DNA of 63,892 bases, the filler included, from Octopus bimaculoides (taxonomy: Eukaryota), in NCBI RefSeq assembly GCF_001194135.2. It is 10 parts of 10 records of this genome, joined end to end, with 100 filler letters (N's around TTAATTAATTAA, not from the genome) between each part and the next. Parts side by side here need not be neighbours in the genome. Positions count along the whole stretch, not along the records: positions 44,065 to 49,545 come from NW_026327745.1; 9 more parts are not named here. One strand, written 5' to 3'. This document shows positions 42,334-49,645 of this stretch, in pieces. The number at the start of each line of letters is the position of its first letter. Position 1 is the first letter of the stretch. The notes under the pieces were generated by a model. The model ran no database searches. It was given only the letters and a program-made list of their open reading frames with translations, and was not told the origin of the DNA. A program made the position numbers and the translations under genes.

Positions 42334-45105
42334 GTGAGTTTCACACCTGTCTGATTTTCTTAGCCATCCCGATCATCATGATCATCATGATCATCACCAT
42401 CATCATTGTTATCACTAACACCATCACCATGTTGAATAAAATCATGATTAATTGATCCTCCTGTATTTTGTTTTACCCAAAGCCAGAAACTTTTCAGCAC
42501 CCCACCTGTCTATAGATAGATGGATAGATANNNNNNNNNNNNNNNNNNNNNNNNNNNNNNNNNNNNNNNNNNNNNNNNNNNNNNNNNNNNNNNNNNNNNN
42601 NNNNNNNNNNNNNNNNNNNNNNNNNNNNNNNNNNNNNNNNNNNNNNNNNNNNNNNNNNNNNNNNNNNNNNNNNNNNNNNNNNNNNNNNNNNNNNNNNNNN
42701 NNNNNNNNNNNNNNNNNNNNNNNNNNNNNNNNNNNNNNNNNNNNNNNNNNNNNNNNNNNNNNNNNNNNNNNNNNNNNNNNNNNNNNNNNNNNNNNNNNNN
42801 NNNNNNNNNNNNNNNNNNNNNNNNNNNNNNNNNNNNNNNNNNNNNNNNNNNNNNNNNNNNNNNNNNNNNNNNNNNNNNNNNNNNNNNNNNNNNNNNNNNN
42901 NNNNNNNNNNNNNNNNNNNNNNNNNNNNNNNNNNNNNNNNNNNNNNNNNNNNNNNNNNNNNNNNNNNNNNNNNNNNNNNNNNNNNNNNNNNNNNNNNNNN
43001 NNNNNNNNNNNNNNNNNNNNNNNNNNNNNNNNNNNNNNNNNNNNNNNNNNNNNNNNNNNNNNNNNNNNNNNNNNNNNNNNNNNNNNNNNNNNNNNNNNNN
43101 NNNNNNNNNNNNNNNNNNNNNNNNNNNNNNNNNNNNNNNNNNNNNNNNNNNNNNNNNNNNNNNNNNNNNNNNNNNNNNNNNNNNNNNNNNNNNNNNNNNN
43201 NNNNNNNNNNNNNNNNNNNNNNNNNNNNNNNNNNNNNNNNNNNNNNNNNNNNNNNNNNNNNNNNNNNNNNNNNNNNNNNNNNNNNNNNNNNNNNNNNNNN
43301 NNNNNNNNNNNNNNNNNNNNNNNNNNNNNNNNNNNNNNNNNNNNNNNNNNNNNNNNNNNNNNNNNNNNNNNNNNNNNNNNNNNNNNNNNNNNNNNNNNNN
43401 NNNCATGGCCACAGTCAAATGACTGAAACAAGTAAAAGAGAGTAAAAGAGTACGAATTCATATTTCAACAAAATGACATCTAGAGTTATTTCTCCTGCTT
43501 ATTGTTTATGCATATGTAACACGGAAAAGACAAAAAACNNNNNNNNNNTTGATTCATCCGTCCACCAGTTTGGAAGATAATCAAACCAAAATTTAATGAG
43601 TTCAAGCTACTCACTCAATGAATATTTCTGCCGAATTTGGTGAAAATCTGTTTAGCTATTTTCCGGTAATTTTGCAAACACACTGTCAAGCAGATGAAGT
43701 CAAGCGACTACAATAACTCTATTTCGCTTATGTGTGCAGGGTTAATAAAACATTGTTATTATTATATTCGTTACGAGTGACAGAAACGATATTAGTTCAA
43801 AATAGCAACCTGTATATCATTCTTAAAGCAGATATATTATTGAAAGCCTGTTAAGCTGCAGTATTTGTTTCAAGAAAGCATCTCTTATAAACGTATAGTG
43901 TAACACACTATGTCTATAAGAGATACTTTCTCAAGACTAAAACTACTGTTTAACAGGCTTTCTANNNNNNNNNNNNNNNNNNNNNNNNNNNNNNNNNNNN
44001 NNNNNNNNTTAATTAATTAANNNNNNNNNNNNNNNNNNNNNNNNNNNNNNNNNNNNNNNNNNNNATATACAGATATATATTTATAAAGCTAATTATGTGT
44101 GTATGTGTGTGTAACGTGTGTGTACTTCTGTGTATGTGTTTGTATGTGTGTGTGTGTGTGTTTGTATATGTGTGTGTGTGTGTGTGTGCGTGTGCGTGTG
44201 TGCGTGTGCGTGTGTGTGTGTGTGTGTGTTGTTTCCTGCATGAATGCAAAGCATGCAATGCATGCCTAAGTTATATAAATGAATGTAAATAGGAGATCCT
44301 TTTTCACTATGAATGTTTCATTTTTATGAGAGACAGCTGGAAAGGCGATGAGGGACATGCCGTCTTTGCCTCTCACTGCCTCAATTATATGGCTTTGAGT
44401 TTGGAAACTGCATGCTCTGGTTTAACTACCTACAGTCGAGGGAGACAGACTGACAGAGTAACAGAGCGAGGGAGACAGACTGACAGACAGATGGACAGAG
44501 GGTGAGACAGATAATTAGACAGAGAAAGACATTTAGATAAATATATATACGCATACATTATATATATGTATGTACTTATCAATGTTTCTCTGTATCTTCA
44601 TCCCTCTCTCTCTCTCTCTCTCTCTCNNNNNNNNNNNNNNNNNNNNNNNNNNNNNNNNNNNNNNNNNNNNNNNNNNNNNNNNNNNNNNNNNNNNNNNNNN
44701 NNNNNNNNNNNNNNNNNNNNNNNNNNNNNNNNNNNNNNNNNNNNNNNNNNNNNNNNNNNNNNNNNNNNNNNNNNNNNNNNNNNNNNNNNNNNNNNNNNNN
44801 NNNNNNNNNNNNNNNNNNNNNNNNNNNNNNNNNNNNNNNNNNNNNNNNNNNNNNNNNNNNNNNNNNNNNNNNNNNNNNNNNNNNNNNNNNNNNNNNNNNN
44901 NNNNNNNNNNNNNNNNNNNNNNNNNNNNNNNNNNNNNNNNNNNNNNNNNNNNNNNNNNNNNNNNNNNNNNNNNNNNNNNNNNNNNNNNNNNNNNNNNNNN
45001 NNNNNNNNNNNNNNNNNNNNNNNNNNNNNNNNNNNNNNNNNNNNNNNNNNNNNNNNNNNNNNNNNNNNNNNNNNNNNNNNNNNNNNNNNNNNNNNNNNNN
45101 NNNNN

Positions 45106-45145
<40 letters not shown>

Positions 45146-45749
45146 TATATTATATATTATATATTATATATTATATATATATTACATATATGTATGTATA
45201 TGCGGATGCATGAGCAAGGCAAATCCTTAGTAATTAGTTAAATTAGACATGTAGTACATGCGTGCGCACGCATACAAAACTTGCACGCACACATACACAC
45301 ACACGCATATGTATGTATATACATACACACGTGAACGCATTTCCGTGTTTGTAAGACGATAGATAAATAATTAGAAGGGAGATTATCTACAAGGATCACA
45401 CACATAGTAAATACATATTGTCACCAAGCAGGACGTCTACTATACATAGATATACATACATAGAAAGAAAGAAACAAAAAAACAAAGAAAGAATGAATGA
45501 AAGAAAGGTGGTGGGATGCGATGGGAGAGGTGGAGTAAGAATTGGAAGATAATTGCTGGTGTTAATGAGACAAATAGAGAAAGGTAGCGATGTCTGCTGT
45601 AAACGACTTCCATCCTACCTGGTTTTTATGCCACACTGTCAGTCCAGGTCGTTTTTTATTGAAGGTGTAATTGGATGTGCAATCAAGCGAAAACAGTGCT
45701 TACAAACAACTCGCCCACCCTTCCATCTCACCTTCTTACCCTTCTCACC

Positions 45750-46916
45750 TTTTTTACCTACCTACCTACCTACCTACTTACCTTCTTACCTGCCTAAATT
45801 ACTTACCTACTTACCTGCACCCTTACCTCCTTTCCTACCTAACTGCAGTTCTTACCTCTTTTACATTTTACTTAAATTAGTTTGCTACTTACATACCTAC
45901 CTACCTACCTACCTATTTTTCTTACCTGCTTACCTTTCATCTTACATTGTTACTTACCTTCTTATCTATCTGCTGTTCTTACCTTTTTACCCACCTGCCT
46001 AAATTACTTTTCTACATAGATACCTACCAACTAAAGTATTAATCTACCCATCTTCTTATTTACTCACTCAGCTTATATTTCCTCCTGCCGACCATTCTAC
46101 CGACCCACCTTCCTTCCTACCTACCTACCTACCTACCTGCCCACCTATTTATCTACATACATCAGAGCCACCGACTTACAAACATACAAACTTACAAACG
46201 CTTACAAACTTTCTAGTTACCTACCTACCTCCTTCCCTACATACATGCATGCATACATACATAAATACATGCATACATGCATGCATACATACATATGCAT
46301 GCATCCATACATACATACATGCATACATACATGCATACATACATGCATACATACATACATACATAATGTACATACATGCATGCATACATAATACATACAT
46401 ACATACATACATTTATACATACCTCCATTCTTACCAACCTAGCTAAGTTACCTTTCTGCGTTCATACCTACCTACTAAATTATCTGTCGATCCACCTACC
46501 TGTTTGCCTTATATTTGTACTTATCTATCTTCCCAACTCTCTACGTATCTACCTTTCTAATCTATATACCTATCCTCCTACCTATTTACCTACCTGCCTA
46601 TCTACCAACCTACCTACTATATTCCTATCAACCTCCATATCTACCTATCTAGCTACTTATCTATCGATAACAATCTACCTACCTACCTACGTATCTCTCT
46701 ACCTCTCTTCTTACCTACCTGTTACTTACCTATCTAAATTACTTTTCTACCAACATATCACATCAACAATCTACATACCTGACCATCTACCGACTTACTC
46801 AATTTACATTTCTACCTCCCAATTTATCAACCTGTCTACCAAATTATTCGCCTACTAACTTATCTACCAATCCGATCAACTTACACACTTTATCCAGCTA
46901 CCAACTTGTCTACCTA
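45750..46916. repeat. Degenerate (CCTA)n/(CATA)n/(CATG)n tetranucleotide low-complexity field
   Basis: Seen directly; continues at 47660-47850 on the far side of the hammerhead array. Confidence 0.9.
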
Positions 46917-47657
46917 GAATGATGTGGACGCCTCTGATGAGAACCTAATTAGGTTCGAAAATCGATTAAGGTTGTTCATCATTTTTACAGTCTGCAGAGA
47001 AATGGTTAAAAATTTGCCCTCTTTATAATTATACCATATGTTACATATATATTATATCTCATACCTTGATACTGTGTGGACTGAGACCTCCGTTGACAAG
47101 TTGCTGGTATTTATAGAGTGCTAAACATTTTCGGTATGCAAATTAAGAACTCCTTCATAGAATAACTGCTGCATTTGTTGTGTATATTAACAGTCTGGCT
47201 ACGTGTTTCTTTATTTATTGATTGTCAAAATGATGTGGACGCTTCTGATGAAAACCCGATAAGGTTCGATAATGTATGAAAGTTTTTCATAATTTTTTTT
47301 TTCTCATAGTCTTCGGAAAAATGGCTAAAATTTGCCCTGTTTATAATTATACCATATGTTACATATTTATTATACCATACATTGATACCGTGTGGACTAA
47401 GATACCCATTGACAGGCTGCTGGTATTTATAGAGTGCTAAACACTTTCGGTATGCAAATTAGGGACTCCTTCATAGAGTAACTGCTGCATTTGTTGAGTA
47501 TATAAACAGTTTGGCTACTTGTTTTCCTAGAGACTGTCAGAATGATTTGGACGCCTCTGATGAGAACTCAATAAGGTTCGAAATTCGATTAAATTTTTTT
47601 TTAAAAAGGGATAAAATTTGCTCTGTTTATCATTATACCATATGCTACATATATACC
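46917..47657 (+). repeat. Tandem array of about 311-bp units (about 2.4 copies), each with a hammerhead motif; retrozyme-like
   Basis: CTGATGA cores at 46934, 47245 and 47557 (periods 311 and 312). Units 1 and 2 align along their length (ttgccct.tttataattataccatatgttacatat...gctggtatttatagagtgctaaaca.tttcggtatgcaaatta). Confidence 0.92.
46919..46982 (+). ncRNA. Type I hammerhead ribozyme (complete minimal fold)
   Basis: Stem I 5' atgatgtggacgcct; core CTGATGA; stem II gaacct-aatt-aggttc (perfect 6 bp with G10.1-C11.1); GAAA; short stem III a-TCGA-t; U16.1 and A17 (UUA triplet, predicted cut after 46968); stem I 3' aggttgttcatcat. AATCGATT is self-complementary. Confidence 0.85.
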
Positions 47658-47876
47658 TTCTGAGTTACCTGCCCACCTTCCAACCAACTTGCCAACCTTC
47701 GAGCTTACTTGCTCGCCGACTTACCAACCTGCCTACTAACTTACCTACCTACATTCCTACCAACTTAACTACCTGCTAACGTACCTTCCAATCGACTTGC
47801 CAATCTACATACCGACTTACCGACCTACCAATCATATTCCTACCTACCTGCATAAAGTTATCCTTTCTACTACAGG

Positions 47877-47951
47877 CACAAGGCCTGAAATTTTGGAGGA
47901 GGGGGTATTTATTTTATCGACCCCGAAAGGATGAAAGGTAAAGTCGACCTC
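47877..47951 (-). mobile_element. SINE family A fragment cut by a gap
   Basis: ttattttatcgaccccgaaaggatgaaaggtaaagtcgacctc. Confidence 0.8.
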
Positions 47952-48884
47952 NNNNNNNNNNNNNNNNNNNNNNNNNNNNNNNNNNNNNNNNNNNNNNNNN
48001 NNNNNNNNNNNNNNNNNNNNNNNNNNNNNNNNNNNNNNNNNNNNNNNNNNNNNNNNNNNNNNNNNNNNNNNNNNNNNNNNNNNNNNNNNNNNNNNNNNNN
48101 NNNNNNNNNNNNNNNNNNNNNNNNNNNNNNNNNNNNNNNNNNNNNNNNNNNNNNNNNNNNNNNNNNNNNNNNNNNNNNNNNNNNNNNNNNNNNNNNNNNN
48201 NNNNNNNNNNNNNNNNNNNNNNNNNNNNNNNNNNNNNNNNNNNNNNNNNNNNNNNNNNNNNNNNNNNNNNNNNNNNNNNNNNNNNNNNNNNNNNNNNNNN
48301 NNNNNNNNNNNNNNNNNNNNNNNNNNNNNNNNNNNNNNNNNNNNNNNNNNNNNNNNNNNNNNNNNNNNNNNNNNNNNNNNNNNNNNNNNNNNNNNNNNNN
48401 NNNNNNNNNNNNNNNNNNNNNNNNNNNNNNNNNNNNNNNNNNNNNNNNNNNNNNNNNNNNNNNNNNNNNNNNNNNNNNNNNNNNNNNNNNNNNNNNNNNN
48501 NNNNNNNNNNNNNNNNNNNNNNNNNNNNNNNNNNNNNNNNNNNNNNNNNNNNNNNNNNNNNNNNNNNNNNACAGGGAAGGGTGGAGGAAAGAAAAAAAAG
48601 ACGGAAGGGAGAGAAGAACTAGGGCGACAACAGATGAGGTGGGGGAGGTTAGAGTAAGCGGCAGGGGAGAGGCGAAAGTGGAGGGAGTGAGAAGAAGAGG
48701 AAGAAGAGAGAAGAGGGTGGAGGGGGATAAAAGATAGAGGGAGGGGTTAGAGAAAGAGAGGGAGGGGAGAGTGGGAGAGAGGAAAAAGAGAGGGTGGGCA
48801 ATGTTCAAATACTGCTAGCAGTTGCTCTTTAGCCCTAGGCCAGATCTAGTCGACCAGGCAGACTTATGATCAAAGGCGTTCCAA

Positions 48885-49528
48885 CTGTAACGAATTGAAG
48901 AAGGGCGCAGTCAGAATGCTTCTCAGAAACCCTGGATCAGCCAAGGTTGTGCAAAGGTACATGTATGGTTGTGACAGAACCACAGCCTTACATTATCGAA
49001 GCAAAAATCCTCACTAGATGTGGTAAGGGAGACATTGTATTTATACCTAGAGTACCACTAATACCAACAGATGTCCCCTTTCGTTTCAAACAATTGCATT
49101 TCCCAATAAGAGTCAGTTATGCCTTGACCATTAACAAGTCCCAAGATCAAACACTGCAGATTGTCGGTCTCCATCTAGAAGAGGGCTGTTTCTCACATGG
49201 TCAGTTGTACATAGATTGTTCCAGAGTAGGAATCCCACAGAAACTCTTCATAAATGCTCAAAGAAAAAAGTTGAAAACATTATATATACAGAAGTTCTGT
49301 AAATGTTTTATAATTTTCGAACAATAAATTTCTCTATTATTATTTATATTACTTTCTATGGTTAGATATTCTAAATAAATTCGTAAAATTATGTTATGCA
49401 ATATTTAAATAGTTTTTAACAATTTTTATTGTCAGAAAAATGGGCATCGCGGTAGGGGCCAATATGTGCCCTATGAATGCATTTCAACACTGTACTGACT
49501 GGGCTGAAGGCCGAGAGGCCTGCTTGTA
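48885..49528 (+). mobile_element. Helitron 3' end (Pif1-like helicase C-terminus plus 3' terminus)
   Basis: MLLRNLDQPRLCKGT...VFIPRVPLIPTDVPFRFKQLHFPIRVSYALTINKSQDQTLQIVGLHL..CFSHGQLYIDCSRVG (SF1B helicase motifs V and VI). Terminal hairpin ggcc-gaga-ggcc followed by a CTAGT-like cttgt at about 49523-49527. Confidence 0.9.
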
Positions 49529-49645
49529 TATATATATATATATATNNNNNNNNNNNNNNNNNNNNNNNNNNNNNNNNNNNNNNNNNNNNTTAATTAATTA
49601 ANNNNNNNNNNNNNNNNNNNNNNNNNNNNNNNNNNNNNNNNNNNN

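What the first reader, a model, noticed from the sequence alone, without database searches (positions are those of the whole stretch)
46917..47657. Tandem hammerhead-ribozyme array of about 311-nt units: candidate cephalopod non-LTR retrozyme
Seen: three CTGATGA cores spaced 311 and 312 bp apart in near-identical units. Copy 1 folds as a complete minimal type I hammerhead (stem I, CUGAUGA, perfect 6-bp stem II, GAAA, 2-bp stem III capped by palindromic UCGA, UUA cleavage triplet, predicted cut after 46968). Copy 2 has GATA instead of GAAA and an A10.1-C11.1 mismatch. Copy 3 keeps the core and stem II but loses the 3' strand of stem I. The array sits inside a (CCTA)n field. Established: metazoan type I hammerheads in 150-450-nt tandem repeats, with a palindromic stem III that cleaves as a dimer, are the hallmark of newt, schistosome and cricket satellites and of non-LTR retrozymes, which give monomeric linear and circular RNAs and are thought to be mobilised by Penelope-like elements. 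Inference: this is a decaying copy of such a family. Penelope RT and GIY-YIG remnants in the window show that a candidate helper class exists in this genome. I cannot tell from the sequence whether this family has already been reported.
Basis: partly seen in the sequence, partly recalled or inferred. Interest (0 to 1): 0.88.

Follow-up and report, generated by a model that had tools for sequence, protein, structure and literature searches.

The report
Decayed hammerhead-ribozyme tandem repeat insertion
A 745-bp insertion of about 2.4 head-to-tail copies of a 311-bp unit carries one intact and two broken self-cutting hammerhead RNA motifs, and is most likely a dead copy of a known kind of small parasitic element (a "retrozyme"), so it is a modest new example, not a new phenomenon.

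Summary
CTGATGA occurs at 46934, 47245 and 47557, spaced 311 and 312 nt, in a 2.4-unit tandem array (about 46916-47660).

**What supports a hammerhead:**
- Copy 1 is a complete type I hammerhead, cutting after 46968.
- The three-copy consensus is also complete, so the lesions in copies 2 and 3 came later.
- A formal descriptor hit 1 of 3000 shuffles.
- A covariance model built only from four published retrozyme hammerheads ranks copy 1 first in the piece (15 bits, E about 0.003).

**What fits the retrozyme class:**
- Unit length (311 nt), GC content (34%) and the AAUCGAUU palindrome at helix III match metazoan non-LTR retrozymes.
- The array sharply interrupts a G-poor (TACC)n-like field, which is what an insertion looks like.

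**Caveats:**
- Rfam's curated hammerhead models do not match, even on 85 nt.
- The motif has GAAAA and a UUA triplet, outside the usual GAAAY/RUH filter.
- The predicted circle is not unusually self-paired.
- Only one hammerhead is intact, so the locus cannot release monomers.
- No other copy, the organism, or a Penelope-like helper could be checked with these tools.

**Verdict:** probably a decayed member of a known class. Interest is modest.

The parts
46916..47226 (+). Repeat unit 1 (311 nt), the best-preserved unit. It carries the only complete hammerhead.
   Evidence: Unit alignment; TRF array; 34% GC.
46918..46983 (+). Hammerhead copy 1, complete, type I. Distal stem I is 46918-46924 paired with 46977-46983. 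Proximal stem I is 46930-46933 paired with 46969-46972.
   Evidence: Descriptor hit; pair table; top hit of independent model R1 at 46924-46977, 15.0 bits, E 0.0034.
46934..46940 (+). Catalytic core strand CUGAUGA (C3-A9) of copy 1.
46941..46956 (+). Stem II of copy 1: GAACCU / AGGUUC, 6 bp, with loop AAUU.
   Evidence: The MFE fold also predicts this hairpin.
46957..46968 (+). G12-A13-A14, then the 8-nt palindrome AAUCGAUU (15.1 to 16.1, at 46960-46967), which forms a 2-bp stem III with a UCGA loop, then A17. The predicted cut lies between 46968 and 46969.
   Evidence: Palindrome test; descriptor places H17 at 46968.
47227..47538 (+). Repeat unit 2 (312 nt). Its hammerhead is dead: G10.1>A at 47252, A14>U at 47270, U16.1>G at 47278, and the palindrome is lost.
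   Evidence: No + strand R1 hit. The fold is no better than shuffles.
47539..47660 (+). Repeat unit 3, truncated. The core and a 5-bp stem II are kept, but A15.2>U at 47584 and the 3' strand of stem I is deleted. Homology to the other units ends at 47655-47660.
   Evidence: R1 gives 6.0 bits, E 1.4.
45700..46915 (.). Upstream part of the G-poor (TACC)n-like low-complexity field that the array interrupts. It includes a (TACA)n block at 46238-46422.
   Evidence: GC skew -0.7 to -0.8; TRF rows.
47661..47850 (.). Downstream continuation of the same G-poor field.
   Evidence: GC skew about -0.5; TRF rows; shared 8-mer ACCAACTT at 46900 and 47683.

Best explanation
This is an old, inactive insertion of a hammerhead-bearing short tandem repeat of the metazoan non-LTR retrozyme type. 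It is possibly a non-autonomous derivative of a Penelope-like element.

**Shown by the sequence.** About 2.4 head-to-tail units of 311 nt sit inside a low-complexity field. The ancestral unit carried a complete type I hammerhead, and only unit 1 still does.

**Inferred from the published biology of the class.** In an intact master copy:
1. A transcript spanning two or more units folds so that neighbouring hammerheads pair through the AAUCGAUU palindrome into an extended helix III (a double hammerhead).
2. [quoted passage not shown]
3. A host RtcB-type RNA ligase circularises the monomers.
4. The reverse transcriptase of an autonomous element (Penelope-like elements are the leading candidate) copies the circle round and round.
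5. The resulting cDNA, with a non-integer number of units in arbitrary phase, is integrated. Here it starts 53 nt before a cut site and ends about 64 nt after one.

**This locus.** It can no longer release monomers. If transcribed, at most one cut after 46968 is possible.
For: - **Complete hammerhead in copy 1.** It meets a formal descriptor, and 1 of 3000 shuffles gave any hit.
- **Complete ancestral hammerhead.** The three-copy majority consensus keeps the whole core, a 5-bp stem II, the palindrome and both parts of stem I.
- **Independent model.** A covariance model built only from the published coral, mussel and axolotl retrozyme hammerheads (PMC7229834 supplement) ranks copy 1 first on both strands, with all elements and the cut site aligned: 15.0 bits, E 0.0034.
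- **Helix III palindrome.** Positions 15.1-16.1 form a perfect palindrome, as in all four published ribozymes.
- **Class features.** Unit length 311 nt, 34% GC and the tandem arrangement match the published definition of 150-450 bp units with GC below 45-50% (PMC7229834).
- **Insertion signature.** GC skew jumps from -0.8 to about 0 and back at sharp homology boundaries.
- **No poly(A) tail at the 3' end of the array**.
- **Neutral decay.** The hammerhead is no better conserved between units than the rest, 81% against 87%.
- **Hammerhead architecture.** Helix II is long (6 bp), proximal helix I is short (4 bp), and helix III is small and palindromic. This resembles the variants associated with Penelope-like elements (PMC4209133).
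- **Microsatellite insertion.** This is a reported bias of Penelope-like elements (PMC8557442).
Against: - No Rfam hammerhead family matches at E <= 10 on 5.4 kb, 801 nt or 85 nt.
- The motif has A15.2-U16.2 (GAAAA) and a UUA triplet. This satisfies the NUH rule but falls outside the GAAAY/RUH filter used to define published families.
- The predicted monomer circle is no more stable than shuffled sequence (z = -0.17), whereas published retrozyme circles are described as highly self-paired.
- The monomeric catalytic fold (-10.5 kcal/mol) is less stable than an alternative fold (-18.6 kcal/mol).
- No second locus of the family was found, though the collections searched hold essentially no DNA from this organism.
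- No target-site duplication stands out beyond a 5-nt TACCT in a TACC-rich field.
Confidence: 0.62

Rival explanations
1. This is not a separate retrozyme family. It is a fragment of an autonomous Penelope-like element: tandemly reiterated pseudo-LTR or 3'-terminal sequence carrying that element's own minimal hammerhead, left behind by a truncated or rearranged insertion.
For: - The architecture is closer to the variants associated with Penelope-like elements than to the canonical 6-bp helix I and 4-bp helix II type: 6-bp helix II, 4-bp proximal helix I, and a small palindromic helix III.
- The array sits in a microsatellite-like field.
- The 2026 preprint finds that retrozyme consensus sequences are sister to pseudo-LTRs of Penelope-like elements, so the two readings overlap.
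Against: - The piece holds no RT or GIY-YIG reading frame, only low-complexity ORFs and a helicase remnant.
- The period is 311 nt, not the several kb expected between pseudo-LTRs of one element.
- No inverted truncated copy lies next to the array.
- The unpaired base 5' of stem II described for Penelope-like minimal hammerheads is absent.
Confidence: 0.15
2. This is an ordinary local tandem duplication (a minisatellite) in which a hammerhead-like motif arose by chance. There is no ribozyme activity and no RNA-mediated mobility.
For: - Rfam's curated models do not recognise it.
- The independent model's score is modest: 15 bits, with a rough E-value.
- No other copies were found.
- The conservation of the core across the three units is only what a tandem duplication gives.
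Against: - 1 of 3000 shuffles of the piece yields any hit to the relaxed descriptor, and none with a stem II of at least 6 bp together with a stem III of at least 2 bp.
- The motif also carries the class-specific perfect palindrome at 15.1-16.1, which the descriptor did not require.
- It sits in a tandem repeat of the class-typical length and GC content.
- The array is foreign to its flanks in composition, which points to insertion and not to local slippage of the surrounding field.
Confidence: 0.17
3. This is a SINE-like, Pol III-transcribed hammerhead element of the schistosome Sm-alpha kind, mobilised by a LINE.
For: GGTTCGAAA in stem II/GAAA loosely resembles a tRNA B box (direct reading). 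That Sm-alpha is SINE-like is from my own knowledge, not checked here.
Against: - No tRNA-like structure (ARAGORN found 0).
- No A box at the right distance, and no poly(A) or simple-repeat tail at the 3' end of the array.
- The copies are strictly head to tail, not dispersed monomers.
Confidence: 0.03

Closest known systems
Metazoan non-LTR retrozymes (Cervera & de la Pena 2020, PMC7229834), especially mussel Mg353 and axolotl Ax353 (HHR_Amex2)
   Same: - Type I hammerhead once per unit, in head-to-tail repeats of about 300 nt.
- Low GC and no coding capacity.
- Helix III of 2 bp capped by a tetraloop, so that positions 15.1-16.1 form a perfect palindrome (AAUCGAUU here; ACACGUGU in Ax353; ACGCGCGU in Mg353).
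- A17 at the cut site, as in Ax353.
   Different: - Helix II is 6 bp (5 bp in the consensus) against 4 bp.
- The 15.2-16.2 pair is A-U, not C-G, giving GAAAA and a UUA triplet.
- There is no detectable sequence similarity outside the core.
- The predicted circle is not unusually self-paired.
- Only one intact ribozyme is left, and copy number and expression are unknown.
Minimal hammerhead variants in pseudo-LTRs of Penelope-like elements (Cervera & de la Pena 2014, PMC4209133)
   Same: - Long helix II and short helix I.
- Small palindromic helix III, implying action as a dimer.
- Association with tandem arrangements and with insertion into simple repeats.
   Different: - No RT or GIY-YIG ORF within the accessible DNA.
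- The period is 311 nt, not about 3 kb.
- No unpaired base 5' of stem II.
- A proper distal 7-bp closing stem on helix I.
Newt and salamander satellite 2 hammerhead repeats (about 330 bp). Dimer-dependent cleavage is cited from Forster et al. 1988 through PMC4209133 and PMC7229834.
   Same: - Unit size.
- Type I topology.
- A weak helix III with a palindromic loop that needs a second copy for efficient cleavage.
   Different: - Unrelated sequence.
- The salamander arrays are highly abundant (about 126,000 hammerhead motifs in axolotl) and transcribed.
- Here there is a single 2.4-unit decayed array of unknown family size.

Membership tests
Hammerhead ribozyme, type I | Catalytic core C3 U4 G5 A6 N7 G8 A9 and G12 A13 A14 | tested here: met
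   Intact in copies 1 and 3 and in the three-copy consensus. Copy 2 has A14>U.
Hammerhead ribozyme, type I | A15.1-U16.1 pair and H17 (not G) at the cut site, with three helices around the core and helix I open | tested here: met
   Copy 1 has stems of 4+7 bp (I), 6 bp (II) and 2 bp (III), with A17 at 46968. 1 of 3000 shuffles hits the descriptor.
Hammerhead ribozyme, type I | Match to the curated Rfam hammerhead covariance models | tested here: not met
   No hammerhead family listed at E <= 10 on 5481, 801 or 85 bases.
Hammerhead ribozyme, type I | Match to a covariance model built from experimentally cleaving retrozyme hammerheads, excluding this locus | tested here: met
   R1 was built from 4 sequences, one with a single loop-II A removed to keep the alignment in register. 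Copy 1 is the top hit at 15.0 bits, E 0.0034, with a rough calibration. The score is modest.
Hammerhead ribozyme, type I | GAAAY / RUH filter used by de la Pena's group to accept motifs into families | tested here: not met
   The motif reads GAAAA and UUA. The filter is quoted in the PMC7229834 supplement. The broader NUH rule is met.
Hammerhead ribozyme, type I | Mg2+-dependent site-specific self-cleavage | not testable with these tools
   Needs in vitro transcription of monomer and dimer constructs.
Metazoan non-LTR retrozyme | Type I hammerhead within head-to-tail repeats of 150-450 bp | tested here: met
   Units of 311 and 312 nt, 2.4 copies.
Metazoan non-LTR retrozyme | Low GC (below 45-50%), non-coding, no LTRs | tested here: met
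   34% GC. The longest ORFs are 34-54 aa, with no homologues found for the two stop-free frames I probed. The flanks are simple repeats, not LTRs. PBS and PPT motifs were not searched for specifically.
Metazoan non-LTR retrozyme | Multi-copy family dispersed in the genome | not testable with these tools
   No eukaryotic genome collection is available. Pattern scans and protein-proxy probes found only chance hits.
Metazoan non-LTR retrozyme | [quoted passage not shown] | tested here: not met
   Only copy 1 is complete. The locus is a decayed copy.
Metazoan non-LTR retrozyme | Unit-length RNA predicted to be highly self-paired | tested here: inconclusive
   The circular MFE is -58.6 kcal/mol with 61% of bases paired, but z = -0.17 against shuffles. 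The unit has diverged 13-19% between copies, so the ancestral fold may differ.
Metazoan non-LTR retrozyme | Expression as linear and circular monomeric RNA | not testable with these tools
   Needs RNA data from the organism.
Penelope-like element (autonomous) | ORF with RT and GIY-YIG endonuclease flanked by pseudo-LTRs | tested here: not met
   No such ORF in 44065-49545. The only coding remnant is a PIF1-type helicase.
Penelope-like element (autonomous) | Minimal hammerhead with helix II of 6-8 bp, helix I of 4-5 bp, small or absent palindromic helix III, and an unpaired base 5' of stem II | tested here: inconclusive
   Helix II is 6 bp, proximal helix I is 4 bp and helix III is palindromic, all matching. 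The unpaired base is absent and helix I has a 7-bp distal extension.

The most novel reading that the evidence does not exclude
Its ribozyme would be intermediate between the minimal hammerheads of Penelope-like elements and the canonical retrozyme hammerheads: 6-bp helix II, an A15.2-U16.2 pair and a UUA triplet. Intact master arrays elsewhere in the genome would still produce 311-nt circular RNAs. That would give a natural intermediate supporting the proposal that retrozymes derive from pseudo-LTRs of Penelope-like elements.
Probability: 0.3. Interest if true: 0.45.

Novelty: new member of a known kind. Interest (0 to 1): 0.3.

Why it matters
If the family is real and still active elsewhere in this genome, it would do three things:
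- extend hammerhead retrozymes, and their abundant small circular RNAs, to another animal lineage;
- add a ribozyme variant that curated Rfam models miss, which is useful for improving descriptors;
- offer a test case for the proposed descent of retrozymes from Penelope-like elements.

This locus alone is a dead copy with no expected function. Its practical value is as a seed sequence for a genome-wide and transcriptome-wide search.

Tried and rejected
1. **Rfam 15 at three scales.** It found no hammerhead family. The matches were microsatellite-driven miRNA and snoRNA noise, all far below gathering scores.
2. **Protein databases as a proxy for other copies.**
   - The 57-aa stop-free frame through the hammerhead of a pristine dimer had no word matches.
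   - The 54-aa ORF of unit 2 had 0 hits among 1.84 billion representatives.
   - These negatives say little. The collection does not even contain this piece's own helicase-remnant ORF, so it covers this genome's repeats poorly.
3. **Exact-pattern DNA scans.**
   - L001 is a GC-rich bacterial contig in which the 20-mer lies in an open frame reading VDASDEN.
   - L002-L004 share only the 21-24-nt seed.
   - Viral contigs gave nothing.
4. **Finding the source contig or cephalopod DNA by exact protein lookup.** Nothing was on record, so the organism remains unverified.
5. **First version of my descriptor.** It missed copy 1 because it extended the stems into the palindromic loops. It was fixed.
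6. **MFE folding as a test.** Copy 1 folds better than shuffles (z = -2.6), but the MFE pairs CUGA with the UCGA loop and does not form the catalytic core. Nearest-neighbour folding cannot confirm or refute a hammerhead.
7. **tRNA/SINE-like origin.** Rejected.
8. **Target-site duplication.** Only TACCT (5 nt) flanks the array, which is not diagnostic in a TACC-rich field.
9. **Literature search for the motif's own sequence.** It returned only unrelated primers.

Full report
**Observation.** The piece (44065-49545, with two runs of N) contains CTGATGA exactly three times, at 46934, 47245 and 47557 on the + strand, spaced 311 and 312 nt. Tandem Repeats Finder reports one long-period array: 46918-47581, period 316, 2.1 copies, 82% matches. 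Aligning the units shows that homology starts at 46916 and ends at 47655-47660. That gives two full units (46916-47226 and 47227-47538) and a truncated third.

**Is copy 1 a hammerhead?**
- Read against the standard numbering, copy 1 has:
  - C3-A9 (46934-46940);
  - a 6-bp stem II, GAACCU/AGGUUC, with loop AAUU (46941-46956);
  - G12 A13 A14;
  - A15.1-U16.1 and A15.2-U16.2 closing a UCGA loop;
  - A17 at 46968;
  - a helix I made of 4 proximal pairs, an internal loop and 7 distal pairs.
- A descriptor with these rules found this one site in the piece. It found 1 relaxed hit, and none with comparable stems, in 3000 dinucleotide-preserving shuffles. An earlier version of the script had a bug.
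- I wrote that descriptor after seeing the sequence, so I also built a covariance model from four published, experimentally cleaving retrozyme hammerheads: coral Amil224, mussel Mg353, and axolotl Ax353 and Ax330 (supplement of PMC7229834). One A was removed from Ax330's loop II to keep MAFFT in register.
- Searched with filters off, this model ranks copy 1 first on either strand: 46924-46977, 15.0 bits, E 0.0034 with rough calibration. The core, stem II, GAAA, stem III and cut site align as predicted. Copy 3 scores 6.0 bits (E 1.4) and copy 2 has no + strand hit.

**Evidence on the other side.**
- Rfam 15 lists no hammerhead family at E <= 10 on 5481, 801 or even 85 bases. I count that as a failed membership test against the curated models.
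- The failure is understandable, because the motif departs from the common consensus. The 15.2-16.2 pair is A-U, not C-G, giving GAAAA and a UUA triplet. That is inside the NUH rule but outside the GAAAY/RUH filter used by de la Pena's group. Helix II is also longer than the canonical 4 bp.
- Nearest-neighbour folding predicts stems I and II (z = -2.6). It prefers to pair CUGA with the UCGA loop (-18.6 kcal/mol) over the monomeric catalytic fold (-10.5 kcal/mol). That fits a ribozyme that is poor as a monomer, but it proves nothing.

**State of the three copies.**
- Copy 2 has G10.1>A, A14>U and U16.1>G, and has lost the palindrome.
- Copy 3 has A15.2>U and a deletion that removes the 3' strand of helix I.
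- The majority consensus of the three copies keeps the whole core, a 5-bp stem II, the palindrome and both parts of helix I. The ancestral unit was therefore a complete hammerhead, and the lesions came later.
- The hammerhead region is no better conserved between units than the rest: 81% against 87% for units 1 and 2. This locus is decaying neutrally.
- One stem I pair is G-C in unit 1, U-A in unit 2 and C·A in unit 3. With three sequences this is an anecdote, not covariation evidence.

**Surroundings.**
- The array (GC skew about 0, 34% GC) interrupts a strongly G-poor (TACC)n-like field that runs from about 45700 to 47850, with skew -0.7 to -0.8 upstream and -0.5 downstream. The homology boundaries are sharp. 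This is what an insertion into a pre-existing simple-repeat field looks like, not local slippage.
- There is no poly(A) tail. The only candidate target-site duplication is TACCT, which is not diagnostic here.
- No inverted partner copy lies nearby, there is no tRNA-like structure, and no other fragment of the unit occurs elsewhere in the piece.
- The array starts 53 nt before a cut site and ends about 64 nt after one, so its phase is arbitrary relative to the ribozyme.
- The piece contains no RT or GIY-YIG frame. Its only coding remnant is the C-terminus of a PIF1-type helicase, of the kind I know from Helitron transposons.

**What it most likely is and how it works.** The features match the published definition of metazoan non-LTR retrozymes: a type I hammerhead once per unit, head-to-tail units of 150-450 bp, low GC and no LTRs (PMC7229834). 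Positions 15.1-16.1 form a perfect 8-nt palindrome, AAUCGAUU. All four published ribozymes show the same pattern: ACAGUACUGU, ACGCGCGU, ACACGUGU and ACAUGU. This is the basis of the double-hammerhead, in which two copies pair to form an extended helix III (PMC4209133).

The life cycle is inferred from that literature, not shown here:
1. Oligomeric transcripts self-cleave after position 17.
2. [quoted passage not shown]
3. The RT of an autonomous element copies the circle into tandem cDNA, which integrates.

Penelope-like elements are the favoured helper. A 2026 preprint finds that retrozyme consensus sequences are sister to their pseudo-LTRs. Those elements also tend to insert into microsatellites, which agrees with this locus, though only weakly given how repeat-rich the piece is. 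The hammerhead here has a long helix II, a short proximal helix I and a small palindromic helix III. That is closer to the variants associated with Penelope-like elements than to the canonical form with a 6-bp helix I and 4-bp helix II, so a derivative of such an element is a live reading. By the preprint's operational rule (at least two consecutive complete hammerheads) this locus is not active.

**What could not be done.** The decisive test is whether other copies exist, and it is out of reach here.
- The DNA collections are prokaryotic, viral or metagenomic. They returned only chance hits.
- Probing protein databases with ORFs of the repeat found nothing. Those databases do not even hold this piece's own helicase-remnant ORF, so the negatives are uninformative about copy number.
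- The organism could not be verified. The helicase remnant's best hits are unnamed, at 64-74% identity, with one Octopus bimaculoides protein at 60%.
- In the searchable literature I found no report of hammerheads or retrozymes in cephalopods and no printed instance of this motif. The 2020 paper covers a mussel and mentions many invertebrate phyla.

**Verdict.** This is probably a decayed member of a known class with a somewhat atypical ribozyme. It is a useful seed for a genome-wide search but is not surprising in itself. Confidence in the retrozyme-type reading is 0.62. The rivals are a fragment of a Penelope-like element (0.15), a chance motif in an ordinary tandem duplication (0.17) and a SINE-like element (0.03).

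Noticed in passing
window 48872-49327 (+): C-terminal remnant of a PIF1-type helicase (...ALTINKSQDQTL...GQLYIDCSRVG...), of the kind I know from Helitron transposons, with an in-frame stop near 48896. There are 355 database homologues at E <= 0.001, the best at 64-74% identity and many named ATP-dependent DNA helicase PIF1. The remnant itself is too short to pass Pfam.
   Followed up: partly
window 46238-46422: A (TACA)n/(TGCA)n microsatellite produces a pile of spurious Rfam miRNA matches (mir-297, mir-466, mir-5014 and others; E down to 6e-9). All are far below gathering scores. These families are themselves microsatellite-like.
   Followed up: yes
window 45700-47850 (excluding 46916-47660): About 1.4 kb of degenerate (TACC)n/(CTAC)n-like, almost G-free sequence (GC skew to -0.84). 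It gives long artefactual ORFs rich in YLPT on the + strand.
   Followed up: partly
window 47868-47951: A non-repetitive block (GGCACAAGGCCTGAAATTTTGGAGGAGGGGG...TCGACCCCGAAAGGATGAAAGGTAAAGTCGACCTC) abuts the assembly gap. It could be the edge of an interspersed repeat. It was not identified.
   Followed up: no
window 44096-44229, 44438-44511, 44604-44626, 45106-45201, 48571-48800: Further simple repeats: (TG)n, a 30-nt GAGGGAGACAGACTGACAGA-type repeat, (CT)n and (TA)n bordering the assembly gaps at 44627-45105 and 47952-48570, and a purine-rich (GGGAGG/AGAG) tract. The gaps sit at simple repeats, typical of a short-read scaffold.
   Followed up: no
L001 921-940: The 20-nt stretch TGGACGCCTCTGATGAGAAC (stem I plus hammerhead core) occurs by chance in an open frame of a GC-rich bacterial contig, where it reads VDASDEN. 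It is a reminder that short hammerhead-core patterns hit coding DNA.
   Followed up: yes
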